A stretch of DNA of 64,000 nt from Caecitellus pseudoparvulus (taxonomy: Eukaryota > Protista > Bigyra: Bicosoecida): NCBI GenBank assembly GCA_965644315.1, contig CBFFRQ010000057.1:1-64000 (forward strand). Direction: 5' to 3'. Made by a program: the position numbers and the translations under genes. Numbering within the stretch: the stretch's first letter is position 1; the number at the start of each line of letters is the position of its first letter. A model generated the notes under the pieces. It had not been told where the DNA came from. It worked only from the letters and a program-made list of their open reading frames with translations, and did not search any database. This document shows, piece by piece, positions 42,760 to 63,209 of this stretch.

Positions 42760-45700
42760 ATGGCACTCGCAGGGTACCTCTTCAAAGCAAACGCCCAACA
42801 CACAGCGTACCACAAACGGTGAGTCGTGTGTGAATTCCAGCTCGCCGTGCGAGGCGAGGCGAGGGTGGGCTGTGGCCACTGCACTCTCGCTGCACCGACT
42901 GCAGGTACTTGGTGTACTATGGAGCGCGCCAGGTGTCGTACTACGATAGTGAGGAGGATGCCGCGAATGGAAAGAGCAAGGGGGCAATTTCGTTGAAGGA
43001 CGGGGTTCTCCGTGTCGGCTTTGGTGCGTGTTCGACGCGACGGAAGGTTGCAGGCGACGCCAGGCACCTGTGCCCTGCCGGCTGCTCCCCTCACAGTGGA
43101 CGTGCAGCGGGCAAAGTCCCGTCGTTGGTTCTCTTTCAAGGCGGAAGCCGAACCACCCACCAGCCATGTCTTTTCGATCGAAACCCCGGATCGCGTGTAC
43201 AAGTTTGCTGCCAACAGCGAGGAAGACATGCTTGACTGGGCGAAAGCCTTGTCCAGCGCGATGCGCCCGGAAGGCGCACTCATGAAAGAAATTGCGGCTG
43301 CCCATGAAGCATCCAAGGCGGATGTGGCGAAGGAACGGGAGGCTCGCATCCGGAAGGTGAAGGGTGTGATTTCGCATGGACGGGGGGACTCAACAGTGCC
43401 TGCCCCGGATGACGTGGATGAGGCGTACTCCAAGCCTGTTCCCGAGGTGGATGCAGCCTACCTGCAGCGTGGCCCGCCCACGCACCTCCTCATCCACGTG
43501 CATCACTTGGCTGGCGTGCCTCGCCTGCTGGGGAAGGGTGTCGCCGACGGCGCTCGCCTGACAGTGGGCATCATGCTGGCGGATACTGACGATGCCGACG
43601 GCCACGTGTACACAGACGAGCTGCGGTACACAGCTGCGCTCCCCAGTAAAGTTGTGCGTGCGTGCAATGGCGTGTCGGCGTTTGACTCTGCAGGCACGCC
43701 GGATGTCGTCCCGACTGAGCCGGCTGAAGCCGAGGATGACCCCGCCCCCTCTACTTCGGGTGGTGCCGCGGCGTCAACAGCGGCCGACGGCGCGGCTGCC
43801 CCTGCTGCTACCGGCGCAGGCGATGCCCCACCGGCGCGCGCGGCAGAGGACTCTGGCTTCCCAGACGAAGAGAGTAGCGACGAAGAGCAGGCGGAGGGAC
43901 CGGGCGGCATGGAGCTGCCAGAGGAGGCAGACGACTTCGACGAGGACGTGTGCCCCCTGTCTGCCACTTTCTCCTTCCTCCTCCCCGCTGCGAGCGAGAC
44001 GCAGGATGGGCCCATTCCCGACATGCAGTTGCCTGACACGTCGAAGATGCGCATTGCTCTGCGCCTGCACAACAAGGGCTTGACTGAGACAATCGCGAAG
44101 AAGCGCCACCTGGTGCTTGCTCGCCTGCCCACGCTGGACGGGCAGCAGATCCGGCCATACCACCCCCAGCCCCTGCCCCTGCGTGTGCTACCACCCGAAG
44201 GAAGGGAAGTGGACGTGGCAGAGGAGACGGCAGGGGACACGCAGCCTGAGCTGCTGCTTGTGATGATGTGGGTGGGCGGAGGTGAACACCAGCTCCGTGA
44301 GGGGGTGCTGTCCAACGAAGAGGCCGCTGCTGCAGTCAAGCCGGTCCAGCCTGGTGACGAGGGTGGGGACGGAGACCCTAACCGCACTAAAGGAGTGTCG
44401 TTTACCTCCGGTGGGGCCTACGCCTTCGGCCTAGGCGACACATCTTCAGCCGTGACACTGCGCATGGCAGTGCCCGTGTTTCACAAGCCTGGCATCAGCG
44501 TGGCAGGGGCCAAGGCCAGCGACGATGCATGGCGCCAGCGGGCGCACGAAATCATCACCAACATGAACGCGGATTGGTACAAAGCTGGCGCCGTGGATGA
44601 GGCTGGCTCCGCGGGCGCCTTGGCACACCTGCGGTCGTCTCACCCATCGGCTGCGGCTGCGCGGCAGGCAGTGTGGAACCTGTACGGCCGCCCCATTGCC
44701 CGGCTCTCACCCACCGGCACCAACATGTGGGAGGCGGTGGACGGCGAGGAGGACCGCGTGCACGAGGACATCCCCCTCGTGCTGCAGCAAGCCTTTGATG
44801 CCGACTCTGCCGCCCAGCGCAACCGAGGAGCCATCGCAGACCGGGGTGGCGGGCAATTCCGTGGCAAGCTAGACCACCGGCATCTCGCGCTGCTGGGTGG
44901 CGGCGCAGGGGAGGATGAGTACGAGGCAGATGCAGTCAGCGTCGCGTCTGGCATGTCATACGCTTCTGACGACGAGGACAAGACCGGCATCCTGCGCCTG
45001 CACGGCGACGGTGTGGAGGACTACCACACACTTGCCGGTGGCCATGCCCAGCGCCTGGTGCAGGCAGCCGCCGAGGAAGGCGCAGGGGCAGTCATCCCCA
45101 CTAAGAGCCTGCGCCCGCCCAAGACCAAGTTCGCCGACGCCGTGCCGGGGGACGACATTGCTCTGAGTGGTATCGGGCTCATGCCGCTCACACTGCACCC
45201 AAGCACACACCCCGCTTTCATGGCCGCGGCGGCATTTGCCAACGCCCAAGCAGCGCTGCCGGATGACCCGCCGCCCCAGCCGCCTGCCATCGGCTTCGCC
45301 ATGGACATGGCCAAGGCCGGGCTGGAGGCAATGGGGAAAGCCCACGTGAAGCGCATGAAGTCGCAAGGCATGCGGAAAGGAGTGTACCAAGTCCTCGTCT
45401 CTGTGCGCAAAGTGCAGGACTTGGTGCTGCCACAGTCGCACCCCCACTCGGCAGCTGCGGCGGCCGCCCTTCTGTCCCAGAGCCCAGTGCAAGTGAGCGT
45501 GGATGTGGTGGGCCTAGGTTCAGACCAGAAAGAGGAGATGCTGTCCTCCCTCGGCCCCCTTCGCATCGCGCTGCCCATGCACGACCGCGCTGTGCGGCGT
45601 GACATCCGCAGCGTGGTCTTGGCAGAGGAGAAGCGCCTGTTCCAGAAACTGGAGGCTTCACAGAAGGCCACTGCACAAGGCGGGCTGCCAGAAGACTACG

Positions 45701-48700
45701 AGGTGCTGACAGAGGCTGGCGAAGACATGACTGACCTGGGGGAGGTCATTGATACCGCCACAGAGGCCGCCGCGGCGCAGGGGGCGGGGACAAACCCCGC
45801 AGTCTCAGCAGCCCTGTGCCGGGGCACGAGCACTTCATTGCCCATGTGCTGGGTCGTGGATGACGCCATTACGTTGCGTTTGCCGGCTGCCTCTGAGGAG
45901 CAGCTGGCAGGCGCCAACCTGCGCATTCGGGTGCGGGTGCCGACAGTGGCATCCCCCCCCGATTTGGCGGGCGGGAATGTCGTGGGAGAGTTCACAGCTC
46001 CACTGCCTGTCATGTACATGCAACAGCGCAAGTATGGGCGGGACGCTGCGGGGGGGACCAGTGTGGGCGGGGACACCTCTCTTTGGTGCAGGTGGGTAGC
46101 ACTGGGCGCACCTCCCGCAGCAGAGGATGCGGCAGTGAGCGTGGCTCGGGAGGGAGGCGACCCTTGCGCGGTGCCAGACCCAGGGGTGCACGGCAGTGTG
46201 CGAGGTTTCGCCCTCGTCACAGTGAACATCCGACCTCTCATCGTCAGCAAAGGGTACATTCCCGGGCGAGGCACTGCAGAGACGTCCAAGCGCCTGGCTC
46301 TCGGCCCACTGCTGGCTGGGCGTGTGTCCACAGACATGGGGCAAGGCAAGGGGGCAGAGGAGGTCGGTTTGAACGTGCCTGGCGCGGCCGCTGAGGAGGA
46401 GGGCGGCGCCACAGAGCGCAAAGTGGCAGAGCCCCCCCGCACAACAGAGGACGACAAGCTGCCGCCCCACCCCCATGACCACCTGGACCCGCACGCCCCC
46501 AATCCTGGCATGGGGGACGTGGAAGACGCCCGACCAGCCATGCACTCAGCGGACTGGGGCGCTACAGCCCGGACACCCAACGGTCGGCCGCTCAACCGGC
46601 GCCACCTGCCCCTGCGCCTCGGGTATGAGGGCATACCCACCGCCCCCCTGGTGTTCCCCCCCACGTTGACGCCTCGAATGGGGTCCCTCATCATCACGCT
46701 GCACAAAATCATCGACTTACCGGCCATGGATGCCGGCATTGCTGGCCTGAGCCCCGGCATCGACGCTTACGTCAAGGTGGCCTGTGGAGGTGCCGTTGTC
46801 AGTACATACGTGAACACCATCAAGGGCAAGGGGGTGCTGCAGACGGATGTCTGTGCACGCATCGTACTGCCTGTGTGGCTGCCTCTGCCCACCTACGGCC
46901 AGGCCCGATCCCTCACTCGTGGCTCTTCCAGGTCTGCTGCGGCAGCCGTCGCCGCGGCGGCCGTGGCCAGGGACCACACTCACGCACAGGGTGCATGGCC
47001 GGGCCTGCGCACTGGGTCCACGACGCGCCCTGGCTCCTGCTGGGCACTTGGGAACGGGCGTGAGGTGGGAGGCTGGGGACTGTCTTCGGACAGTGCCCGG
47101 GTGCCGGAGGCGAGCGGGGGCAAGGCCGCAGCGGCCCCCTCCACAACCAAGCTGGACGCCCTCGACCGAGTGCCGTTGGAGGCCCACCTCGCCGCTGCAG
47201 ATGCATCGCGAGACCCGCTGGGTGTGCCCTCGGCTGCGACACAGTCCACAGCGGCGAAGGCCATGGAGCGGGCTGCAGCGGCAGCCGTCGCGCGTGACTA
47301 TGATGTTGGAGCTGTGGTGGCCAGCAACGTCACCGCCCCGTCCATCACGGGTGGCTTGGCAGGTGGGGGCCAAGACAGTGCCATGCGCCACGCTGGGTTT
47401 GGCTGGAACATGGAGGATGGGTGTCAGTTGAGCAGGGTGACGTTGGGTGTCTGGGACCATGACTCGGTGGGCAACGACGACCGTGTGGCTTGCACTTCAC
47501 TTTCCCTCGCGGACATTATGGCGACACAGGCGCTGCGCACAGAACATCAGATGGACGAAGCCCCTGACACTGCCAACGCGCGCCCGTTAGGCGCGGGGCC
47601 TATCTGGCTGCCGCTGCACGGCGCCCGGCTAAACAAGGATGGCGGTGTGGGCGTGTTCTCGTCAGAGGGAAGCAGCACCGCTGCTGCCATGAACAGCGAC
47701 CCCCGACTGGGCAAGCAGTACCGTGGAGCCATCCTGGCTTCCTTCCGTATCGTGGAGTGGGCGGAAGCGGACGCAGGGCTTGCCGAGCGAGAGGCTGACT
47801 TGGCTGACTCCACGCTCTGGCTGCGACGCGGCATGGGGGGCTCGGAGCAGACGCTGGCCCACGAAGAGAACCACGACATGATTGAAGACATGGGTTTGCT
47901 GCTGCCGCAAGCGCCCTTCCTCTTCGCGCCGCCGCCCGACATGGACGTGTCCACCATGGAGACGTACGTGTGGCCGCCCCCGCTGATGGCACGCATGCAC
48001 TTGCGCCATGTGCACCCGCTGCAGCCACTGCAGTTGTTCCAGTCCCTGCGAGATCCCAGCCGTGCCTTCTTCACAAGGTATGCCGTGGCTGCCATGGTAC
48101 TTTCGGGGACTGACCTGCCCTTCCTGCTGTCCAGGACGAACGTCGGGCAACCGTCCAAGATGCACATCACTGTTGCCTTGGGCCCTCAATTCCTCATCAG
48201 TAGCCGGGAGACCCAGGAGGCTGGGCGCGTGTACTGGCACCAGTTGCTCACTGCAGCTGACTGGGTGCTGCCCACGAACCCCTCTGCACTCCCCGACCTG
48301 TTCGTGTACCTCACGGACCGAGATGGGCGCCACATTGCCCAAGGGCGCATCCCAGCTGCGAGGGTGATCTCAACACGGTGGGGCACGGGGCCGTTTTGGA
48401 TTCCCCTCATCCCTGATGAGACGACGGGAGTGGTCGATGTGCACAAGACGCTGACTCCTGACGACCGTGCAGGGTCTGTCGCAGTGTGGCTGGGCATGGG
48501 GCCGCTGAAGGAGTTGTTTAAGTCCCGCTCGAAGAAGCACCGGCAGATGCGCAAGCGCCTACGGGCTGCCCGTGCCATGGGCCTGAAAGTGTCCAAAGAG
48601 CAAATCTACGGCGGAGCGGCGGCTCACTTTGAGTCGGGCCCCGCGAAGCCCCTGCAAATGGTGCCCGTCTCTGCTGCACGCCGAGATGAAGGAGCGAAGC

Positions 48701-51700
48701 AAGAGCGTGCAGGAACGCCGGCTGGGGAAGCTGCTGCTGGGGCAGGGAGCGCCACTGCCGCGGGAGAAGCTGCAGCAGCTGCGCCGACCTCACCGCGAAC
48801 GCTGGATGAGTTCATGGAAGCACAGGCCGCAGCGGCAGCGGCTTCTGCAGCTGCCCCCAAGCTCAAGTCTGTGCACACCTTGCACGACAAGCACGGCAAG
48901 ATGAAGCTTCTGCCGAGCATGGGGCACGTGGAGGAGCCTGACGACGACACGCTGTCCATTTCATCTCAGTCCACCACGAACTCAGTCATGTCGGGCGTCA
49001 GTGCGTACTCCGAGACGCCTCTCACAGCGCCCACCCGTGGCAAGAAGGATCCCGCAACAGGCAAGCGCGCCCCGCGCCAGCGAGAGAAGCTGGTGGACTT
49101 GTCCAAGGTGACAGCAGACACTGTCGCAAAACGTCTGGGCTGGGAGGCCTCCCTTGCGGCAGCCTTGGACATGACCAAACGGTACCAACTGCGCCTGTTC
49201 GTGTATCAAGCCCGACACCTGCCAGCGGTGGACTGGGATGGGGCGTCGGACCCGTACCTTCGGGTTCGCCTTGGGGAGGTTTTTCGCGACACTCGCACCG
49301 TGACGAGCACGTTGAACCCTGTGTGGGGATCAACCGTCGTGCTGAACGCCAACTTGCCGCCGTACCCGCTGGCGCCAGAGCTGCTTCTTGAAGTGTGGGA
49401 CAAGAACATCCTTCGCGACAAGCGCCTTGGCATGACGCGTGTGAGCCTCGCAGACGCCATGATGGTGGACACAGAGCGCCTGTACAACCGAGAGGTGGCG
49501 AAGCTGGACACTGCCCGCGGCAGGCGCTTGGCCCGCGCCATAGGCCACGTGCCCATCACGCTGGACATCTCCAAGTTCATCCCCACTCCGTTTTGGGTGC
49601 CCATGGCCCTTGAACATGGAGGCGCGTGGCGAGCAGGGGACGGTGTGGGTGCGACCTATGGTTCTGTAGTTGCGTTTGCCCACCCCAGGACTCGGGGGCA
49701 GCACGTTTCAGCTGTGAGTGTTGGCGCTGGCTCCACGCAGGCGCCGCAGTTGCAAGGCGCCGCGCAGCCCGGTGCCAAGGGCACGCTGAAGAAGTACTCA
49801 CCAGAGCAGCATGCATCCTTCTACCGGGCTCTGCAGTGGCTCGCACCGTCAGCTGCCAACGAAGCCCGAAGAGCGCTGCAGCGCTCCTCAGGCTCTGGTG
49901 CTATCGGGGCCATGTTGGATGCGGCCGTGAAGCTGAACATGCTGGCGGAGAGTGAGCTGGGCCCCTCGGCGCCCTGTGTGCCAGAGCTGCTGCTGGGCAT
50001 GCAGCTGGTGCCACGCGTCATGATGTCAGCTGCAGCAGCTGGGAAGAGCTGGGGAACGAACATGGTGGAGGACGAGGTTCCTGTGCCACTGTCCCCCCCT
50101 CCGCAGCTGCTGCCCCCCACCCGAGATGTGAAGGTGCACATGGTGGTGCTGTACGCATACGGACTGGGCAGCCCTGTCGGCATCCCGTCTGGGGAAGCGC
50201 AGCATCCAGAGGTGACGCTGGGGTTCACCGGCGTGTATCGCAAGGGCAAGGGTGCAACGTCAGAGGATGGCTCCAAGAACTACAGCGCCTCCAAGACCAC
50301 CCGCACACTGCAAGAGGTGACAGCCCCCGTCTTGGCCTCTGGGACGCGGGATGTGGGCACGAAAATTCTCCAAGCTTTCGCCGGCGCAGGTGCTGCCATC
50401 GGGCGCATCTTCACCGGGGGCGACGACGACCCAGTGCCGCCGCCTGTGCTTGGGCTGCCAACTGTGGCGGGTGCATATGCGCGGTACAACGCTCGGCTCA
50501 AGGCAGGTGTCATGGCCCGGGCAGCTGAAGTTCAGCGCATGTTGTCAGGAGATGACCTTGGAGGCGCAAGCGTCGGCGATGGGGACGGCGAGGTTGCCAG
50601 GCGCCTGGCCCCAGCTGCAGCGGCCACTGCGGAGCGCGTCTTGTGGGAGTTTTCCACTCGGCGGTACTTCGTGAACCGTGTGGAGCTGGAAGTGGGGCTG
50701 CCTGATGTAGCCCAGCTGGTGTGGCAGGTGCAAGAAGACAATGCCGACGTGGAGCATCGTGACAAGCAGGAGACATGGGCGGATGAAGCTGAGGCAGCTG
50801 CAGAGGCAGATGCCAAGCAGGCTGCGGCTGCAGCCGAGGCTCACGTGGCAGTTGAGAAGCCTGACAAGGAGGGTGGCATGGCCCCCGTCCCCGAAGATGG
50901 GCCTGGGGATCCAGGGGCACCCAGCAGCCCTGACGAGGGTGCAGCGCGCCCTGAGCCTGTGAAGGCCCCAAAGGATGATGTCCCAGATGAAGGTGGAGGT
51001 GGGGCGGCCGCGGCAGACAGCGGCACTCCCGTGCCAGGCCAGGCGCCAAGAACACCCAATGGCGAATGGTCCCCCCTCGGCGCTGGGCTGCCTTCGCACC
51101 AGCTGCGCGCACTGCGAGCTTGGGCTGCCAGCATGGCCCCCCGCATCCGGCTCAGCGTGGCCGAGGGGGCCGGCATTCTTGGACTGGGTGTCGGGGATGA
51201 CATGTTCGCGGCTTCCACGACCAGCGCTCTGACACCTCTGCCCCCGGCCAAGGTGTACTCAGCCACGCACAAGAAGGGCCACATTGGAGACGCCAGCATG
51301 CCCCTGCCACTGGGGGAGCTCTGGTGGGCCACGCCAGGCAGCCAAGGCGATGACTTGGGGGACGACGAGGCCGACGCTGCAGCGGCTGCTGCCCGCACTG
51401 GCATGTTCTCACCCCACGCACGCAAGCCCAGTGCGCGTGTGGAGGAGCCCCCTGCAGGCTCGGGTGAGAACATTGCCGCTGGGCGCATCCAAGCAATCGC
51501 TCGTCGACGCCTTCTTGAGCGTCGCCGGCGGCACGAGGCTGGCGCGACGCAGCGGGCATTTGCAGCGCACGCTCGCGCCAGAGCACAAGCTGCAAGCAAG
51601 GGTGGCGCCGCCGGCAAGCTTCGGTCTTCATTGAAGACCGCCATCGGGAAAGTGCACCTGGCAGGCGTGTTGTCCGGAGCAGCAAGCGCATTGACACAGG

Positions 51701-54700
51701 CATCGGAGGGCAAGGAGCATGTGCTGCTGTCTCCCGCTGAGACGGATGGGTTGGCGGTTTTCCGCGCGCCGCCCCCGAACGTGCGGCGGACGAAGGAAGA
51801 GCTGTACAAGATGCTGCTTTCCCGCAGGCGCCTGTTGCGCAGGCGTGCAGTGTATCCACTGCCGTTGGAAGACATGCTGCCGCGGCATGGGAACCTGTTC
51901 AGAGACTACCCTGTGTACACGCACGTGGGCGCAACACCCACAGGCGCGACCCCCCGCATGCGGCACAAGATCGCCGGTCTGGTGCGAGCTGCCGTGCTGA
52001 TCGAAGACCTCAGTGAAACGCGCTCTTCTTCCCAGTGGAAGTACAAGCAAGCTCGCCAGCAAGCCAGGAACCGAGCCAGCGCCCTGGAAGGCGGCATCGC
52101 TGCTGACGCAGCGCGAACTGCTGTCGTGGAGGGCATGAAGGCGGGCCATGTTGCCATGCCAGGCATGAACAAGGAGCAGGACAACATGGATGCCATCGCT
52201 GCGGCTGCCAGCACGCGGTCGCTGTATGTGCAGCGAGTCTTGGCGCTGGGGGGAACGCTGCAGAAGGTGAAGGTGCGGGTGTATGCCATGTCCATTTCTG
52301 CGGCCTTGTCCTGTGTGCCCCGCTCCGGCGTGTCGTACGTGGCACCGGTACTGCGCCAGGAAGGCTACACACGGCCACACCTGGAAGGCCCGCCTGGTCG
52401 CCTGGGTGTGTCTCTCCGCGTGCACGTGTGCGGGCAAAGCGTCGCGAGCAAGGCGGTGCAGTGGCAACCCCGCAGCATCTCGACGTACCAGCGATTGGAG
52501 CAGGACATTGACGAGGCGTACCTCATCCCCGGCACACCTTGCGCCTTCAGCAAGTTCGGAGCCAACAGGCGCAGTATCAAGGGCCTGGCCACAGACCTTC
52601 AGGCGGTGGGGCAGCCCATCCCCCCCACCTTGCAGCGAGACTTGGAGCTGGCTGAGACGTGCAGCAGCACCGACAGGCGCCAGCCGTATGACCAAGTAGC
52701 TGACATCATGCAGTGCATGGAGATCGAGACCACCCTGCCTGGTGTGCCGCTCATGACTTTGGAGGTGTGGCACACGTACGCGACGGACCACGTGGAGGTC
52801 GTGCCTGGCAAGCCAGCGAAGCCTGGCGGGAAGGAGGTGAAGAAGCTGCGGCGAACGCGGAGGTACCATGAGGCCCTCATCGGAGGCACGATCATTGACC
52901 TGGAGCAGCGATGGCTGCACCCTGCGTGGCACTCCATGGGTGGCAAGTACCACGTCACGCCGGAGAGCTTGACTGAAGCGCAGCGACAGACTCAAGGTGA
53001 CCTCATCCAGTTCCACCCAGTTGCGGTGGAGACTCGGCAGCTTGTCGCGCCGTCCTGCCGTGCGATGGCTGTCCTTGAGGCAGCCGGAGACCCAGGCGCA
53101 TCCACTGAGCTGGTGGCCGCCACTTCCAGCCACGGGACAGTGAAACTGGGGCCTCTGGAGGTAAAAGACCGAGGTGGAGCAGTTGTTCCTGACGCGGAAG
53201 GGCGCCTGCCCACTGACAACACTGATGTCGGCGTGACCACCGGTGCCATGCAGCTATGGGTGGACATTATGACAGCGGAAGAGGCCAAGACCTTCCCCCC
53301 TCTGAAGATCGAACGCCCCCCCAAGCTGCACATGGTGTTCCGGGTCACTGTCTGGCGAGTGCGCCGCATCGTGCGCATCAAGTCCTCATCGCGACTTGCT
53401 GATCTGATGAACCTGCCGAAAGGCAAGCGCGCAGATGCGGACCCCACGTCTGCCACCAACCTCTCTGCATCTGCACAGCAGGCCCTGGCGCAACAGGCCG
53501 AGTTTGCAACTTGGTGGCCGAAAGATGCAGCAGCTGCAGATGCCGCCGCCGGCGCCGAGAAAGACGCCCCTGCGCAGTTGGCAATCGAAGCTGCGCCTGC
53601 CGCAGATGAAGACCCCGGCGCCGGTGCAGCAGCCGCAGGCGAAGTAGCCACCTCTGGGGCGGCGAAGGACGAACGCAACCCGGAAGGTGCGCGGCCAAGT
53701 CAAACTATGGGCAGCGCCAAGGGCGACGATTATGTGTACTTTGACGTGCCCATGCCTCCATTCGGCCCCCCGCTTGAACGGGATCGCATTGCCCACAAGG
53801 CCGCGACCTTAAGAGCACTGCACAGCCGCAAGCGCAGCAAGGGCGGCCCCACGGCCAGTATCGTGGACAATTTAGCCGTCGGTGCCAACGTGGCCGTGGC
53901 AGCGGTGGACACAGTGCTAGACAGTGCGGGGGAAGTCATCAAGGCTGTGGACAACAAGGCCGAATTGAAGACGTTCCTGCCTCCCTCCATGTCGGTGCCT
54001 CCGTCAGACGAGCTTGCCAATCGGTACACTGGCCAAGGGACAACTTCTTTCTTTGCCCGAGCATGCCTGCTTGACCCTGTCGCGAAGCACAAGGATCAGG
54101 ACACTCTGGACGTGGACAAGGGTGACGAGGGGCGTGGTCACGAAGGTGCCGGTCAGGCTGCAGAGGGCAAGGAGGGCGATGCAAGAGCCGAAGGCGACGA
54201 GGAAGAGATGGCTCCTGTGCACAGTCTGATGGCGCCCGCATCCGGGGGCGTGTCTCAAGAGGTGGATGCGGGCCTGGACACGAGCGCGTTCGTGCGCCCC
54301 ACCCACGAGTCCTGGCTCAGGGCCCCCGCACAGGCGAGCAAGGTGGGCTCTGTAGTGCCGCAACTGACCTTCGTACCGCAAGGCATGGACCCGGCAGAGG
54401 CGGACGAGGTGTTCCTGCATGGCGGGGACCAGCCTGATGCGGCTGCGGACGACGACGACGACGAGCTGCCCGACGCCGACGGGGACGGCGAGCCCGACGA
54501 CGTCCGCACTGGCTGTGTGAAGTGCCTGGGGTGCTGCTGCCACTGCGGCGAGATGCTGTGTGCCAGCATCATTTGCTCCTGCTGCAGCGGCCCAGCAAAC
54601 TGCTGCATTGATTGCTGCGCCTGCTGCTGTGGTGCGTACAAGGAGCCTGTGCCGCCGCCCATGGACGTGAAGGTTGAGAGCGAACACACGCTCTTCAACT

Positions 54701-55518
54701 GGCGCATGACGCTGCCAGTGAACCACGAGAAGTGGGGCAGGTGCCCGCCTCCTGACCGGCTGCGCATCGAGCTGTGCCGCACGGTGCCACGTGAGCAGCT
54801 CATCACCAGCGTGGACTTGCGTGGCAGCGCTGTTGCGGCAGGCTTGGCTGCGGGTGTGGGTGCTGTAGTGGACGGTGTGTCATCTGTAGCAACTGCAGCG
54901 ACTGCCGCCCTCACTGGTGGAGCAGCGGCAGAGGGCAAGGTGGAGGCAGCGGTGGAAGCTGCCGCTGCCCCTGCTGGCCCGGTCCAGGACCGCCTTGGGT
55001 ACGTGGATGTGCCCATTGCACAAGCAGTCATGAGTGCCGCAGCTCAGGCAAGCCACACAATCACGCCAGTGAACTACGCAGCGTGGGAAGGCGCCCAACG
55101 CCAGTGGGTAGCCAAGGACAACCACCTGGTCAGCGCCCACGCTGCCAGTGTCATGGGTGGTGCCGGTGTCTGCACGGAGGGCGTTTGGTTGCCGGTAAAG
55201 ACCCACGCTGTGCCACACGTCCTGGACGCGGCTGGGCGTGACTGGGGCATTGCCGCTCTTCCCCCCCTTGAGCACTTGGATGGCTCAGATCGGGAGTGCT
55301 TCCAGGTGTTGGTGTCTGCCGAGATGGTGCCGGAGGCTCTCGCCGAAGAGTACCCTGCCGGCTTCGGGCGCGCCAAGCCTAACCTGAACCCTGTCCTGTA
55401 CAACCCCAGCAAGATGAGAGCAGCAGCAGAGACTGCTATCCGCGCCCACAAGCCGCCTAGGTGCCTTGGCTGCGTCGTTGACGCCTCGGATGGCTCCGTC
55501 GGGTGCAGCATTATGTAG
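42760..55518 (+). CDS. Ferlin-like multi-C2 protein (~4199 aa) with N-terminal PH domain, IQ-like motif and C-terminal CaaX
   Basis: Exons 42760-42818, 42905-43023, 43097-55518 rebuild a PH domain (LAGYLFK..KRYLVYY..VSYYDSE..KGAISL..FSIETPDRVYKFAANSEEDMLDWAKAL). Ferlin hallmarks in order: LPAMD..IDAYVKV, VWDHDSVGNDD, GPIWLPLHG..MN..YRGAIL, LPDLFVYL..GRIPA, YQLRLFVYQARHLPAVDWDGASDPY, VRVY, LIGGTIIDLEQRW, VETRQL, GAMQLWVDIM, FNWR, PAGFGRAKPNLNP. Confidence 0.9.
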
Positions 55519-55825
55519 GGCGGTCAGCCGCCGTCCATCGTCGCCTGGCAAGGCATAGGCTGCATTCGTGCACAGCTCCTAAATCCACTGCCTTCTGGAC
55601 AACACTGCGGCCATCGATGCCCTGCTTGGTCAGCAGCCCCCTCTGCGTGTGTTCGCAACTGGCACAGGGGGCAGTTTCTCGATCATCCAACTGTCAGGGT
55701 GTGCCTGGAAGCAGCGTGCTCAGGCGCAACTGCAGGTGCCGACGCTCGGCCCCGCCTCCCGCATGCTGTGGGCAACTCTCGCCGTGCTCTTGGTACAAGC
55801 ATTCAGAACCGCGCAACTGTAAGCC

Positions 55826-58800
55826 ATGACGCACCTCATTTCGGGCGGTGGTGACGAGGACCTCCGGCTGAGGCCGCTCACGTCACCTCGATTCGGCTAC
55901 CTCTGCCCGTCGTGTGGGGAAGACGCCCCCGACAATCGCTGCTGCGAGTGCTGGACGCAGTGTTTGTGCAGCGTTACTGACCGGTACTACGATGGGGCTG
56001 TCATGCACGGCACGCCCCACGGACGGGGGCGCATGCTCTTCCTGTTCAATGGCTCCTCCTTTTTGGGTGAGTGCGCATGTGTCGCATGCGACAGGCGAGC
56101 AGCGAGGCAAGCTTGCAAGGCAAGCACTGGCGCCGCCGCTGCGTGCAGGGAACTTTCAACACGGCGCTTTCAAGGGGAAAGGGCGCTACACTTGGTTCGA
56201 AGGCAGCGTGCTGTATGCTGAGTGGGCGAAGGGCGAGCCCATTCGGGACAGCCGCTTCGCTGGCGTTGACGGCACGCGCCTGTACGACATCGTGTACAAA
56301 GCCGGCGCAGTCATCTCGGCCAGCCGGCTTGTACTGCCTCACGGAGCCGGTGAAGTTCGCCAGCTCAGTGCAGAGGTGTCCGGAAAGAAGCGAGGAGGGG
56401 GCTCCAAAGCCCTGCCCGGGGACTCCATCAGCACGGGTGGCCCGACGGGCAACGCGCGCCTCGCACGTGCTGCCGCGGTGCAGGACGCCGCTCGAGAGGA
56501 GGCATCTACAACGTACGCATACTATGCAGATCCACGCTACGGCGTGGGGCACTGCCAGAGTGCATGCGGTCGAGTGGCACAAGTTCCGCTGCTGGCGTTG
56601 CCGGCTGTGTTGGTGGCTGCCACCATTGCCTTGGACTTTGCCGCCTTCGCGACCGCCTACACTGGCACCACGTGCCGCATGACTAATCCCCAGACACGCA
56701 GCTGCTTCGGCCAGGAGCCGGGCACTTGTTGCAAGGGCGAAGAGGTGCAGGGGCTGGGGTTCGCCGTGGTCAGCCTGTTGCTCCTGGCGGCCAGCTTGGC
56801 CACCGCTGTCCTGTACGCAGTCAGCAAGCGTGACCTCACCATCGGCGCAGCTCTACCCTCCGTGTTGCACTCTCTGGGTTTGAGCCCCGTGTGGCATGCT
56901 GTGCGCCTGATCTGGGCCCTGCGCACGCCTCGCACGCTGAGCAAGGGTGCGAAGGCTGGCAAGGCCCAGTCGGGCTCTCCCGGCGAGGGGCCTGCGCGGA
57001 CTCCCGCCTCCCGCGCACCAGTCATGTCCTTGGGGCTAGGGAAGACGCGTGGGCGCAGTAACACCAGCTTCAAGGAGGCCAACCCGATGGGGGACGTGGA
57101 GATGCCACCCAGTGCGTCGGGGGGTCAAGGGGGGGACACGGCCGGCCGCGGAACACTGTCCGCCCTGCCTGGCCCCCTCACAGCGGTCAGCACCTCTGTG
57201 CGAGCCATGTTGGAGACGACAGCACCGTGGCTGTTCACAGGTGTCAGCCGTGCCCAGCTGCATCGCGTGGCGCAGCATTGCGTGCCAGCGCTGCTGCTGC
57301 ACGCCTACGGGCTGTTCGGGCTGTGGACGTTTGAAGATGTGCCCCCGCTGGAAGCCGCTGCGGCCGCCTGCGGTGTGGTTGTGTTGTGGTGGACGCTGGT
57401 GGCGTCGGACTTGGGCGGCATCACCATGAAGTCCCTACGGTTCATCCTGCCGCCGCCGGACACGCCTCTGTGGAAGGACCCCAAGATGCCGTCTCTGTTC
57501 GTGCGGGAGTCCCCGCATGAGAACAGTGCACTGTGGCTGACCCTGGCAGCCATCATCAGCGGCCTCTTCCGCGCTATGGAGTTGCTGAGCCGGCTGGCCA
57601 TCCTAGGCGGCGTGCTCGCAGCCACCAAGGGGGTCTTGTTGGCCCTGCTCCTGCCGGGGTGGCTCGGCAGTTACTACTTGTACGCAGCGTGGTCGTACCC
57701 CCGTGAGAGGGACTATGAAACACGCGAGCGGCTCAAGGCATGGGCACTGCCCCACTGGCCCAGCGTGCGCGAGCGTCAGGCAGCGGAGGCTGCAGGTGGG
57801 GTAGGCGGGGCTGGCGGCACTCTTCGGCGTGGTTCCAGCGACGCAGGGAAGGTCAGCCCCAAGCGGCCCGCAACACTGGAGGACAGCAAGGCTGCCTCCG
57901 GGGCGATTGCCTCGCCGCCAGCCGTGCCTGGGAAGTCATCGGGGGGGTTGAAGGGAGGCAGCGGGGCTGGACGGGGAGGCGGCGCCCGAGCATCTGACAG
58001 CGTCAGTGCCCGCCCCCCCACGAGCCCCCGGGAGAAGCCCAGCTCGACGCCGACAGGCACGCCGACGAAGCCTCGCCCCAGCGCCGGCAAGGCAGGGTCT
58101 GACACGGCAGCCAGCTGCCCGATGCGCACCCGGCACTTCTTTGAGGCTTGTGGCGTGCGGTGCTGGGACTGCCTGCGCCCGGGGCTGCGAGATGCCAGTG
58201 TGTGGTGGCGGGAAAGGGCCATTTCGCCCATGGACCCGCGGCTATTAATTTCCTTGGTCGCCTTCCCAGCTCCGAATTGGTCCCCTCTCTTCCCCACGGT
58301 GGCGTCGGTTGGCGCGCCGCTGACCGCCCGCTTTCCTGTGTGGAGCTACTTCGCATCTCGAGCTGCGGAAGACATCCTCGGCATCTTGCTGTTCGCTGCT
58401 ACACAGCGGTACGGCGAAAACCCAGTTTCCTCTTTCCTGGAGTCGTCTGCTCTCGGCACGCCTGTGCGAGCCTGGTGTTGTCGGGAGTCTTTGTGGCTGC
58501 TGCTCGTCGTCTGCACTCTCGTCAAGTACATCCTGCTGCCGTTCTACCTCAATCTGTTCCAGGTGCTCGCACAGCCCCCCCTCGAAGAAGATGGGGAAGA
58601 CGTGCAGGCCCAGTCCACCTTCTCCTTTGCTTGGTGGCGCAAGGTGGACCCACGGAAAGTGCCAGATTGGGCCACGGAGGCGCTGCCAGGGCAAGCGGGC
58701 TACAAGAGTGCCCATCGTCCCAGCACTATGGCTGCCCAGGTGCTGTCACCAAGTCAGGCGGAAGAGGAGAAGAAGGCCGCACCCGCTTCTCGCGCGGAAC

Positions 58801-58853
58801 GGCTGCGGCACTTGTCTGATGCGGGGGGCGACGCCAAGGGTGAAGACGCCTGA
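55826..58853 (+). CDS. MORN-repeat + polytopic XK-related (scramblase-like) membrane protein
   Basis: ATG 55826; intron 56067-56148 (82 nt). MORN-like YYDGAVMHGTPHGRGRMLF..FLGNFQHGAFKGKGRYTW..YAEWAKG. TM region with LFRAMELLSRLAILGGVLAA and YFASRAAEDILGILLF, resembling XK-family motifs. The gene is well supported; the XK assignment is less certain. Confidence 0.7.
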
Positions 58854-59040
58854 GCAAGCCCTTGCGCTGAGGCACACTTTCCTTCTGGCACAATGCACCC
58901 TGACTGCACTGCCTGGAAGACGCAGCAGGTTGCAGCACCCTCTAGTTTGATTGGCGCCTCCTTTCCAGTCTAGGCTTTCCCTGCAGAGGCTGCACCTTGT
59001 GGGTTGTCGGCACTGTTTGCAGCTCTCCAACTTCCGCAGC

Positions 59041-60099
59041 ATGGCCGGGCTCCCTGCTTGGGACAGGCACCCGTGGCTTTTGCAGCTCTTCACCAGCTTG
59101 GCAGTCTCCATGGTCATGCTGCCGTTGACCATGATCTCTTTTTTTGTTGACTTGGTGTGGCCTGCGCCCCGCATCCCACAATCGAAGCACAAGGTGCGCG
59201 TGCGCGTGTTTGAGTGGCGTGGGGTGGAGTTGGAGCACTTGTCGCGTGTCACGGCCCTGCAAAGACTTCGCGCGCCCATCTGCGCTCATGCACAGACCAT
59301 CCTCATCACTGGGGCCTCCTCTGGCATTGGCCGCGCCCTCGCCGTCGAGTACGCCGCGCCTGGCGTCACCCTCCTGCTTACTGGGCGCAATGAGGACAGG
59401 CTGGCTGGCGTGCAGGCGGACTGCGAGAGCCGGGGGGCGCAGGTGGTGCTGAAGGCGCTGGACGTGACGGATCGCGCTGCTACGGAGGCGTGGGTGTCGG
59501 CGATGGACGAGGAGCACTGCGTGGACATGGTGGTGGCGAACGCCGGCGTGACGGCAGAAACCCTGGGCCTGACAGGGCCTCAACGGGATGCCGTCAGCGA
59601 AGTCACACGCCAGCTGTTCTCCACCAACGTGGACGGCGTGTTCAACACCGTCTTGCCGCTTGTGGCGCCCATGAAGGCTCGTGGGGCAGGGCAGATCGTG
59701 CTGATGGCATCGCAGGCCAGCTTCGCACCCACCTTCATGTACTCTTACGGCGCGACGAAGGCCGCGGTGCGTTTTTGGGGGGAGGGCCTGCGGCAGGACC
59801 TGGCCGCGTGGGGTGTTGCTGTGAATGTGGTGTGCCCGGGCTTCGTGCGGTCGCCCATGACGGACGAGTTCACGTTTGACATGCTTGGGCTGGTGGACAT
59901 GCAGGGTGCTGTGGCGGCTACGAAAGAAGGGCTGGAGGCAAACACTGCTGTCATCTGCTTTCCTGCTGTGGTCACCATTGCTACCTCTGTGCTGAATGCC
60001 GTGGCGCCGACGCTGCGGGATGTCCTGGCACGCCTGGGTGTGCTGCATTCGTGGAGGCAGCGCCGCAGCCAGGAGGCGAGGCAGGGGGCCATGTGGTGA
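59041..60099 (+). CDS. Short-chain dehydrogenase/reductase, copy 1, N-terminal membrane anchor
   Basis: Intron 59194-59295; TGASSGIG, NAG, S..YGATK, PGFVRSPMT. Confidence 0.92.
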   Translation: MAGLPAWDRHPWLLQLFTSLAVSMVMLPLTMISFFVDLVWPAPRIPQSKHKVRVRVFEWRGVELEHLSRVTALQRLRAPICAHAQTILITGASSGIGRALAVEYAAPGVTLLLTGRNEDRLAGVQADCESRGAQVVLKALDVTDRAATEAWVSAMDEEHCVDMVVANAGVTAETLGLTGPQRDAVSEVTRQLFSTNVDGVFNTVLPLVAPMKARGAGQIVLMASQASFAPTFMYSYGATKAAVRFWGEGLRQDLAAWGVAVNVVCPGFVRSPMTDEFTFDMLGLVDMQGAVAATKEGLEANTAVICFPAVVTIATSVLNAVAPTLRDVLARLGVLHSWRQRRSQEARQGAMW

Positions 60100-61480: not shown

Positions 61481-63209
61481 ATGGCCATGCTTCGAATCAA
61501 GAAGATGTTTGTGTCCCGCATCGGGTGCGTTGTGTGCCCGCCCGCGCCCTTGGCTGCAGGGGTGCAGGCTGGCTTGCAGAGCGGCAGGCGCTGAGAAACC
61601 TCACACTGCGGCACTTGTCCCTGCACGTGCACCTTTCAGGAACACAAAGCTTGGGCGTGAGGAAGTGCACAAGCGTCTGGGCGAAGACGCCCAGACAATC
61701 GTGGATTCCATGATGTCCTGCACCGAGAAGTGTGCGTGCTGTGTGTGCGGAGGGTAGCGTTTCGGCTTCCTCATGAGCAGGCCCGCTGCCCGCCCGCAGT
61801 TGCTGGCGAGGAGCTCGCAGACGACTTCAACAAGGACCTTATCAAGCTGGTGCTGAAGGTGGGATTCATGTGGCAGGAGAAGCAGCTGACAGAGGAGGTA
61901 AGCCGCCGTTCCTTTGCCTCTGCAGGGAGTCCAGCTGCCGCCCAGCTGGCCCGTCTTGGATGCCCCCTCCATACTGTTGCCCGTGCAGGACGTGGAGCCA
62001 GCGAGGGACTGCAGCACGAGCCTGGCCCAGACGCTGATGGAGTACTTGTCCCGGCCCCCCGGGGAGATTGACTGCACGGACGTGTGTCACATGATCCACG
62101 AGGTGAAGGATGCCGTTATTCCCATCGTGCAGCCACACATGACTGAGAAGAACTGGAGTAAAATCGGCATTTTGGCGGGGTTCTATGGCTCCCATGAGTT
62201 TGCCTCTTTCTTCCTGAACGATCCAGACGTCGCTGAGGAGCGTGCGGCGTTCCTGAGCGTGCTGCAGACGCAGCTCCCGGAGGCTGCTAGGCGGCAGGTG
62301 TGCTCCGTCGTCGGCTGCTTTCTGCCGCGCTGCACCATGCCCGGCTCCCTGTACTGTTTCCCACACCACGCTGTGAAGTTCCAGGCGCCCCCCACTCTGG
62401 ATGACTTCCTGCGCAACTCGCACTACTGCGCCCTCCTGCGGGAGTGGATGGTCACACAGCAACCCGCCTCCATGCCCCTGCTCGAGTTCTACTTCAAAGC
62501 AGAAGACTACGCCGAGGTACGGTCACGCCAGACACTGGCCGCGCGTGCACCCACCCTATGGCGCAAGTACCTCGCCTCGACAGCTTCCACCCGCGCGCCG
62601 CTGGGAGACTTTGACGGCGACGCAGAGCTGCGAAGCGCCCTGGAAGCCATCAAGGCTGTGTTGGACGGAAGCACGCCGCCGAAAGCCACCCTCTTTGCTG
62701 AAGTGCAAGCCAGGGCGCACGCAGCTCTGGAGGAGGTGTTCCAGGGGCCCTTCAAGGCCAGTGACGCGTATGCTGCGTGGGCGGAGGTGAACACTGGCTT
62801 GCCTCTGCCCCAGGTTCCTGCAACGCGTGCGGCGTTGCTGGAACAGCTGGGAATTTCTCAGGAATCTGCCTATGGCATCCTGGCTGCAGCGCCAGGGACG
62901 GCTTCGGAGGCAGGCGCGACAGCTGCCCCGGCAGCAGCAGCAGGAGGCGAAGCAGGCGCCGGCAGCACGAGCCTGGCGAGCGCCTTCCTCACCACTGCCG
63001 AAAAGGGAGGCACTGGAGCAGATAGCAGTGTATCAGCGACGTATGCTGGGATGGCTTCTACCGCCGACGTGCACATCATGGCTGGGGGGTACTCCGGTGG
63101 CGCTGCGGCTGCTGAAGAGGGTCCGGGGGGGGGCGCCGCTCCCAGTGAACCTGTGTCGGAGGGTGCTGCTTCAAAAGCCCCCACAAGCGCAACCACCTTT
63201 GATGAATGA
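61481..63209 (+). CDS. TNFAIP8/TIPE-like domain + CCCH-type Zn motif + RGS domain fusion protein (~484 aa)
   Basis: Exons 61481-61524, 61640-61731, 61800-61897, 61989-63209. TIPE-like KDLIKLVLKVGFMWQEKQLTEED and IVQPHMTEKNWSKI..FYGSHEF; CSVVGC..YCFPHH; RGS TLDDFLRN..LLEFYFKAEDY..LWRKYL..LFAEVQ..GPFKASDAY. Confidence 0.85.

What the first reader, a model, noticed from the sequence alone, without database searches (positions are those of the whole stretch)
55350..55518. Ferlin apparently anchored by prenylation: CaaX replaces the C-terminal transmembrane helix
Seen: right after the conserved ferlin pre-TM motif PAGFGRAKPNLNPVLYNP the ORF reads SKMRAAAETAIRAHKPPRCLGCVVDASDGSVGCSIM-stop, with no hydrophobic helix; it ends in CSIM (55504-55515) with two upstream Cys. 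I see no TM-coding exon in the 307 bp before the next gene. Knowledge: ferlins are classically tail-anchored; CaaX ending in Met is a farnesyltransferase substrate and nearby Cys are often palmitoylated. Inference: a lipid-anchored, potentially reversibly membrane-bound ferlin class that I do not know to be described.
Basis: partly seen in the sequence, partly recalled or inferred. Interest (0 to 1): 0.88.

Follow-up and report, generated by a model that had tools for sequence, protein, structure and literature searches.

The report
Ferlin with a prenyl-anchor tail
A marine flagellate and at least six relatives carry a giant ferlin (a calcium-sensing membrane-trafficking protein) in which the usual membrane-spanning tail is replaced by a lipid-attachment signal, a natural variant I could not find described.

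Summary
Observation confirmed. The stop-free frame 43012-55518 ends CSIM-stop, 34 residues after the ferlin pre-transmembrane motif, with no hydrophobic helix. It is ferlin-derived: seven or more blocks are colinear with canonical ferlins, and the top PDB hits are myoferlin, dysferlin and otoferlin. An independent 99%-identical assembly has the same stop (50 synonymous, 16 non-synonymous changes, no gaps). Six orthologues, down to about 30% identity, also lack the helix and end C-x-x-Met (CSVM, CSIM, CGFM, CATM), five of them as CCxxM like Ykt6. The five that could be placed form one clade among TM-bearing ferlins; 37 of 40 other ferlin hits keep the helix. No convincing spliced TM exon lies downstream. 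The genome encodes farnesyltransferase, ICMT and a separate canonical TM ferlin. Acidic Ca2+ ligands persist in C2C and partly C2D, and are lost in the two C-terminal C2 domains. Best reading: a farnesylated, probably palmitoylated, PH-bearing ferlin paralogue acting as a membrane tether. Prenylation, expression and reversibility are inferred: no read data could be obtained. No paper found. The scan's notes cover this genome only and show no earlier report of this tail.

The parts
55504..55518 (+). CaaX box CSIM plus stop TAG; predicted farnesyltransferase substrate (X = Met)
   Evidence: sequence; C and M kept in 7 of 7 family members with intact ends; X rule from PMC9141697
55462..55473 (+). 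Two upstream Cys (C-L-G-C); the first sits at offset +28 from the motif's PN and is invariant in all 7 members; candidate palmitoylation site
   Evidence: palmitoylation is inferred
55408..55461 (+). Polar, net-basic linker in place of the juxtamembrane segment and TM helix; probably helical
   Evidence: net charge +1 to +5 and mean hydropathy below 0 in all 7 members; the AlphaFold model is too poor to rely on
55273..55407 (+). Last strand of the final C2 domain and ferlin pre-TM motif (G-x-G-R-x-x-P-N-x-x-P-x-L)
   Evidence: domain E 5.8e-11 to a canonical-ferlin HMM; aligns with the myoferlin motif; E 2.7e-4 to the genome's TM ferlin
54499..54639 (+). Cys string, 17 Cys in 40 residues, inserted in the last C2 domain; possible second lipid anchor or metal-binding segment
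   Evidence: 13 Cys in P0002, absent in P0004
52699..54801 (+). Penultimate and last C2 domains (C2F, C2G of Cretu 2025; C2E, C2F of Lek 2010), split by long insertions, acidic Ca2+ ligands lost
   Evidence: domain E 1.7e-28; hhalign 90%; loop table
49156..49614 (+). C2D; four of five acidic ligands kept here, degenerate in P0004
   Evidence: Pfam C2 E 5e-20
48049..48546 (+). C2CD/FerB-region homologue between C2C and C2D
   Evidence: domain E 6.6e-17 to canonical HMM
46648..47766 (+). C2C, split by an insertion; all five acidic ligands kept; most likely Ca2+ sensor
   Evidence: domain E 1.3e-9 and 3.1e-10; loops
45844..46230 (+). Degenerate C2B, no acidic ligands
   Evidence: hhalign probability 92%, E 7e-7
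42760..43266 (+). N-terminal PH domain, first part on short upstream exons (42760-42819, about 42906-43010); exons read frame by frame and not joined
   Evidence: Pfam PH E 5.7e-5 on the in-frame part; frames; PH also weak in P0004
43012..55518 (+). Stop-free frame of 4168 codons under purifying selection
   Evidence: 50 synonymous vs 16 non-synonymous codons against L008

Best explanation
A ferlin gene duplicated in a bicosoecid-like lineage. One copy stayed a canonical TM ferlin. The other lost the TM helix and now ends in CaaX-Met. SHOWN: ferlin ancestry, no TM, conserved CaaX-Met in one clade, intact frame under selection, prenylation enzymes in the genome, Ca2+ ligands kept in C2C/C2D and lost in C-terminal C2s, N-terminal PH. 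INFERRED: farnesyltransferase modifies the CaaX Cys, followed by aaX removal and ICMT methylation. The neighbouring Cys (palmitoylation, or a second prenyl as in Ykt6) or the basic patch gives the second membrane signal. The protein then sits on the cytosolic leaflet and, through PH and Ca2+-bound C2C/C2D, tethers or docks a second membrane (vesicle, food vacuole or plasma-membrane wound) rather than transmitting force through a bilayer. The anchor switch is about 85% likely; the tether role about 50%. A plausible origin (inference) is a stop gained in the Cys-rich stretch that starts the TM helix of protist ferlins.
For: CaaX-Met in window, P0002, P0003, P0004, P0007 (unbiased phmmer hits), P0070 and L024. 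Clade support 99.1/100 and 96 under a mixture model. 37 of 40 other ferlin hits have a TM at +31 to +40 or later. Tail codons vs L009: 22 synonymous, 9 non-synonymous; identity falls to 0.20 after the stop. FTase beta E 2e-51, GGTase-I and RabGGTase beta, alpha subunits, ICMT. Canonical TM ferlin on the same contig. 30 of 37 TM ferlins have Cys at +26 to +40; the CaaX family has Cys at +28.
Against: Met-stop always reads as a GT donor, and is GTGAG in three loci. RCE1 and DHHC enzymes were not searched. The Pfam Ferlin_C, FerI, FerA and FerB models do not hit. Only seven sequences, hosts unnamed; two were found with queries that contained the CaaX tail.
Confidence: 0.83

Rival explanations
1. 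The Met-stop is really a phase-2 splice donor (AT|GT), or an upstream GT is used. The Cys pair would then be the start of a TM helix finished by a downstream exon, and the protein an ordinary tail-anchored ferlin, wholly or as one isoform.
For: Context is GTGAG in L005, L006 and L009. Canonical protist TM helices start with a Cys cluster at a similar offset. A weakly hydrophobic 11-mer lies at 55763-55795 in frame +1.
Against: Donor context is non-consensus in the window (GTAGG), L004 (GTAAT), L021 and L024 (GTGAT). TGAG is simply the commonest stop context, 10 of 37 long ORFs. No phase-2 downstream exon in eight loci reaches the canonical minimum KD17 of 1.88: best 1.52 in the window, 0.8 in L021 and L024. 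No translated similarity after the stop between orthologues. 40 of 300 shuffles match the window's 11-mer score. One candidate donor at 55461 is lost in L008 by a synonymous change.
Confidence: 0.07
2. The end is real but the C-x-x-M is not prenylated. The Cys residues are only palmitoylated or bind metal, or the protein is soluble and reaches membranes through PH and C2 domains.
For: Most members have several tail Cys. CGFM and CATM have non-aliphatic residues at an 'a' position. No experiment exists.
Against: Cys is fixed at exactly -4 and Met at -1 although the tail length differs by 14 residues. The long-tailed members have a second C-x-x-M at their new end. This is what a prenyltransferase reads and palmitoylation does not need.
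Confidence: 0.07
3. Assembly error or decaying pseudogene.
For: The protein is very divergent and full of low-complexity insertions.
Against: Four further 4168-residue database entries; L008 has the same stop, no gaps and a 50:16 synonymous excess; six orthologues share the end.
Confidence: 0.01
4. Not a ferlin descendant, but a multi-C2 protein that picked up ferlin-like segments.
For: Pfam finds only one C2 and a weak PH; no FerI, FerA or DysF hit.
Against: Six HMM blocks plus C2B occur in ferlin order over 3200 residues, full E 2e-103. Best PDB hits are the three human ferlins. Atlas look-alikes carry Ferlin_C, FerB and dsrm_Ferlin. The canonical paralogue also misses Ferlin_C, so that model is blind to these protists.
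Confidence: 0.02

Closest known systems
Ferlins (myoferlin, dysferlin, otoferlin; non-DysF type II protist ferlins such as the paralogue at G000:C57 about 375827-382000, minus strand)
   Same: Order of C2B, C2C, C2CD/FerB region, C2D, penultimate and last C2, and the pre-TM GxGRxxPNxxPxL motif; Ca2+ ligands in C2C and C2D
   Different: No TM helix; CaaX-Met end; N-terminal PH; twice the length through insertions; Ca2+ ligands lost in the two C-terminal C2s, which are the best conserved in ordinary ferlins (PMC2923515)
Ykt6, the TM-less R-SNARE ending CCAIM (PMC9141697)
   Same: A fusion-machinery protein whose relatives are tail-anchored but which uses a di-Cys CaaX-Met; five of seven members here end CCxxM
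   Different: Unrelated fold. No longin domain to hide the lipid, so cytosol-membrane cycling cannot be assumed. Analogy only.
C. elegans Fer1L truncated ferlin (PMC2923515)
   Same: A natural ferlin paralogue without a TM helix
   Different: It lacks the C-terminal C2 domains as well, and no lipid-anchor signal is described; here the C-terminal C2s and motif are kept and a CaaX is added
Engineered geranylgeranylated SNAREs (PMC2192637; PMC2185554, abstracts seen)
   Same: TM replaced by a lipid anchor in a fusion protein
   Different: Artificial; Snc1/Sso2 versions block exocytosis after docking. The ferlin case is natural and conserved.

Membership tests
Ferlin family | Multiple tandem C2 domains in ferlin order | tested here: met
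   six colinear HMM blocks, full E 2.2e-103, plus C2B by hhalign 92%; top PDB hits are ferlins
Ferlin family | Single C-terminal transmembrane helix | tested here: not met
   tail KD19 0.89 vs 1.85-3.5 in canonical hits; none in downstream exons. It is therefore filed as a ferlin-derived variant, not a ferlin by the strict definition.
Ferlin family | C2-FerI-C2 sandwich | tested here: inconclusive
   C2B and C2C present and in order; no FerI Pfam hit, whereas the TM paralogue has one at E 1e-5
Ferlin family | FerB motif / C2CD region | tested here: inconclusive
   homologous block E 6.6e-17 to the canonical alignment; Pfam FerB hits neither this protein nor the TM paralogue
Ferlin family | Two C-terminal C2 domains next to the anchor | tested here: met
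   E 1.7e-28 and 5.8e-11 blocks, hhalign; Ca2+ ligands lost
Ferlin family | Descends from within ferlins on a tree | tested here: met
   one clade among TM-bearing ferlins; 142 columns, midpoint root, sister group weak, P0003 and P0070 too short to place
Ferlin family | Ca2+-dependent membrane binding, docking or fusion | not testable with these tools
   only ligand conservation was examined
CaaX farnesyltransferase substrates | Cys fourth from the end, X = M/S/Q/A | tested here: met
   7 of 7 members end C-x-x-M
CaaX farnesyltransferase substrates | Second membrane signal (nearby Cys or basic patch) | tested here: met
   1-4 extra Cys in all; 5-8 Lys/Arg in P0007, P0070, L024
CaaX farnesyltransferase substrates | FTase and ICMT encoded in the cell | tested here: met
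   RCE1 not searched
CaaX farnesyltransferase substrates | Motif is the true end of the translated protein | tested here: inconclusive
CaaX farnesyltransferase substrates | Covalent isoprenoid on the Cys | not testable with these tools
   needs labelling or mass spectrometry

The most novel reading that the evidence does not exclude
An old, conserved subfamily of doubly lipidated, TM-less ferlins that cycle between cytosol and membranes. They are targeted by a PH domain and triggered by Ca2+ at the ferlin core rather than the C-terminal C2s. This would be a natural test of whether ferlin docking or fusion needs a bilayer-spanning anchor, and possibly part of a wider shift to prenyl anchors in this lineage's fusion machinery.
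Probability: 0.4. Interest if true: 0.75.

Novelty: new variant of a known kind. Interest (0 to 1): 0.62.

Why it matters
The C-terminal TM helix is part of the definition of ferlins (PMC2923515). Removing it lowers docking in otoferlin (PMC8351550), tagging it blocks exocytosis (bioRxiv 2024.03.20.585901), and a TM-less FER1 disturbs microneme traffic in Toxoplasma (PMC11410953). Whether the helix is only an anchor or an active part of fusion is open. A natural ferlin that has kept a lipid anchor across about 70% sequence divergence, next to an ordinary TM paralogue in the same cell, offers a ready tail for swap experiments and a drug handle (farnesyltransferase inhibitors). The limits are a narrow, non-model lineage and a known precedent for such swaps in SNAREs.

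Tried and rejected
Spliced models were not joined: the PH exons and candidate downstream exons were read one by one. The AlphaFold model of the last 269 residues had pLDDT 32 and was not used; no fold search was run. Pfam Ferlin_C found nothing in the genome, not even the TM paralogue. The search for related loci rejected the alignment as too variable. The DNA pattern scan gave 6 loci: one new member (L024), three out-of-register matches in ferlin-motif loci (L023, L027, L028) and two unrelated; it sees only short tails ending in Met. Cluster look-ups did not name the hosts. Paper searches for ferlin with CaaX, prenyl, farnesylat, lipid anchor or Cafeteria gave no description of such a protein; the library lacks most subscription papers. 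Frameshift, pseudogene and downstream TM exon were considered and rejected as above.

Full report
Observation. The window holds a stop-free frame from 43012 to 55518, 4168 codons. It ends with the motif PAGFGRAKPNLNPVLYNP (55354-55407), a 36-residue polar tail and CSIM-stop (55504-55518), with two more Cys at 55462 and 55471. The tail's best 19-residue hydropathy is 0.89 and no part of the frame exceeds 1.65. Only 2 of 2972 stop-ended stretches sampled from this genome end C-x-x-M, one being this gene.

Is it a ferlin? Pfam sees only one C2 and a weak PH, and the Ferlin_C model finds nothing in the genome. A search of the genome with the last 290 residues found a second gene on the same contig. 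It is a 2057-residue canonical ferlin with seven C2 hits, FerI, the same motif and hydrophobic helices after it, and it matches human ferlins at E 1e-91. An HMM of this paralogue and 18 related ferlin hits matches the window protein in six blocks in the same order, full E 2e-103. Profile alignment adds a degenerate C2B. The best PDB matches of the window protein are myoferlin, dysferlin and otoferlin, and its motif aligns with myoferlin's pre-TM motif. It is a ferlin descendant stretched to twice the usual length by insertions, with a PH domain in front whose first part lies on short upstream exons (read apart, not joined).

Is the end real? An independent metagenome assembly (L008) is 99% identical, has the same stop and no gaps, and differs by 50 synonymous and 16 non-synonymous codons. 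Against a more distant orthologue (L009), the last 53 codons show 22 synonymous and 9 non-synonymous changes, and identity drops to 0.20 right after the stop. I tested splicing in particular, because Met-stop always spells a GT donor and reads GTGAG in three loci. It is non-consensus in the window and three other loci, and TGAG is the commonest stop context anyway. No phase-compatible downstream exon in eight loci reaches the weakest canonical TM score (best 1.52 in the window against a minimum of 1.88). Sequences after the stop share no translated similarity between orthologues. A weak hydrophobic 11-mer at 55763-55795 is matched by 40 of 300 shuffles (7 of 300 in L008) and is not conserved.

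Is the CaaX conserved? An unbiased HMMER search of 1.8 billion representatives returned four family members with intact ends: P0002 (CSVM), P0003 (CSIM), P0004 (CGFM, about 30% identical) and P0007 (CSVM). A profile added P0070 (CATM) and a DNA pattern added L024 (CSVM); these two queries contained the CaaX and so are not unbiased. Of 40 other ferlin hits with the motif, 37 have a TM helix and 3 end early with neither TM nor CaaX, probably truncated gene calls, which I did not check. The five members long enough to place, plus fragment P0006, form one clade among TM-bearing ferlins, support 99.1/100; the five alone get 96 under a mixture model. The tree has 142 columns, a midpoint root and a weak sister group. 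A Cys at +28 from the motif is invariant. In four members the next Cys (+29) is the CaaX Cys. In the window's subgroup the tail is 13-14 residues longer and ends in a second C-x-x-M. Keeping Cys at -4 and Met at -1 while the length changes is what selection for a prenylation signal predicts. Five of seven end CCxxM, like Ykt6's CCAIM (PMC9141697).

How it likely works. The genome encodes FTase, GGTase-I and RabGGTase beta subunits, alpha subunits and ICMT. X = Met points to farnesylation. A single farnesyl is a weak anchor, and every member has a second signal: one to four extra Cys, and five to eight basic residues in three of them. The window protein also has a 17-Cys string inside its last C2, so it may be held stably rather than reversibly. 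All five acidic ligands are kept in C2C, four in C2D, none in C2B or the last two C2 domains, where basic residues appear instead. In ordinary ferlins those last two are the best conserved (PMC2923515). I infer a cytosolic-leaflet protein, lipid-anchored at the C-terminus, that binds a second membrane through PH and Ca2+-loaded C2C/C2D: a tether or docking factor, with the TM paralogue doing the classical job. Lipid-anchored SNARE mutants stall after docking (PMC2192637, abstract), which fits but does not prove this. As to origin, 30 of 37 TM ferlins have Cys at +26 to +40, where the helix starts; a stop gained there would create a CCxxM in one step. The tails do not align well enough to show it.

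Organism. The genome is 30.6 Mb and intron-poor, with a 1697-nt 18S. From my own knowledge this fits a Cafeteria-like bicosoecid. The neighbouring gene clusters with an NCBI protein labelled Symbiodinium sp. KB8, which I take for a flagellate contaminant of that assembly; I did not verify this. The orthologous contigs are unnamed and range from 45% to 72% GC, so the clade is old, but its breadth is unknown.

Novelty and verdict. Six paper searches found no prenylated ferlin; coverage of subscription journals is poor. The only natural TM-less ferlin I met is the truncated C. elegans Fer1L. Swapping a TM for a lipid anchor is known in SNAREs, so this is a new variant of a known kind, not a new kind of system. 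It fails the strict ferlin test on the TM helix and passes on architecture and descent. Confidence in a real, prenylated, TM-less ferlin paralogue is about 0.83; interest 0.62.

Noticed in passing
L003:1828-8001 minus (G000:C57 about 375827-382000): Canonical ferlin paralogue with what look like two hydrophobic helices and a long acidic tail after the motif; several related hits (P0008, P0023, P0024, P0033, P0050, P0051) also have long tails with a second hydrophobic stretch, unlike single-pass animal ferlins.
   Followed up: partly
window 54499-54639: Cys string of 17 Cys in 40 residues inside the last C2 domain; 13 Cys in P0002, shorter Cys-rich patches at another place in P0007, P0070 and L024, none in P0004.
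   Followed up: partly
G000:C68:224519-231157 plus: A 3650-codon frame with at least ten C2 domains, four with identical scores, suggesting recent internal repeats.
   Followed up: no
G000:C32:484764-485105 minus and G000:C96:79258-80034 minus: C2 domains inside very long frames of 9255 and 5242 codons.
   Followed up: no
window 61914-63209: Frame with an RGS domain (E 1e-6) preceded by a weak TNFAIP8-like match (E 6e-4).
   Followed up: no
window 55826-60099 and L006:13130-17237: The two downstream genes (a membrane protein without Pfam hit and a short-chain dehydrogenase) keep their order in the genome of P0002, confirming orthology by synteny.
   Followed up: partly
G000:C213:27842-29337 minus: A second, low-scoring SSU rRNA of about 1500 nt (451 bits), probably mitochondrial or bacterial.
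   Followed up: no
window 55763-55795, frame +1: Short hydrophobic stretch in the intergenic gap; not conserved in orthologues, two non-synonymous differences in that frame in L008.
   Followed up: yes
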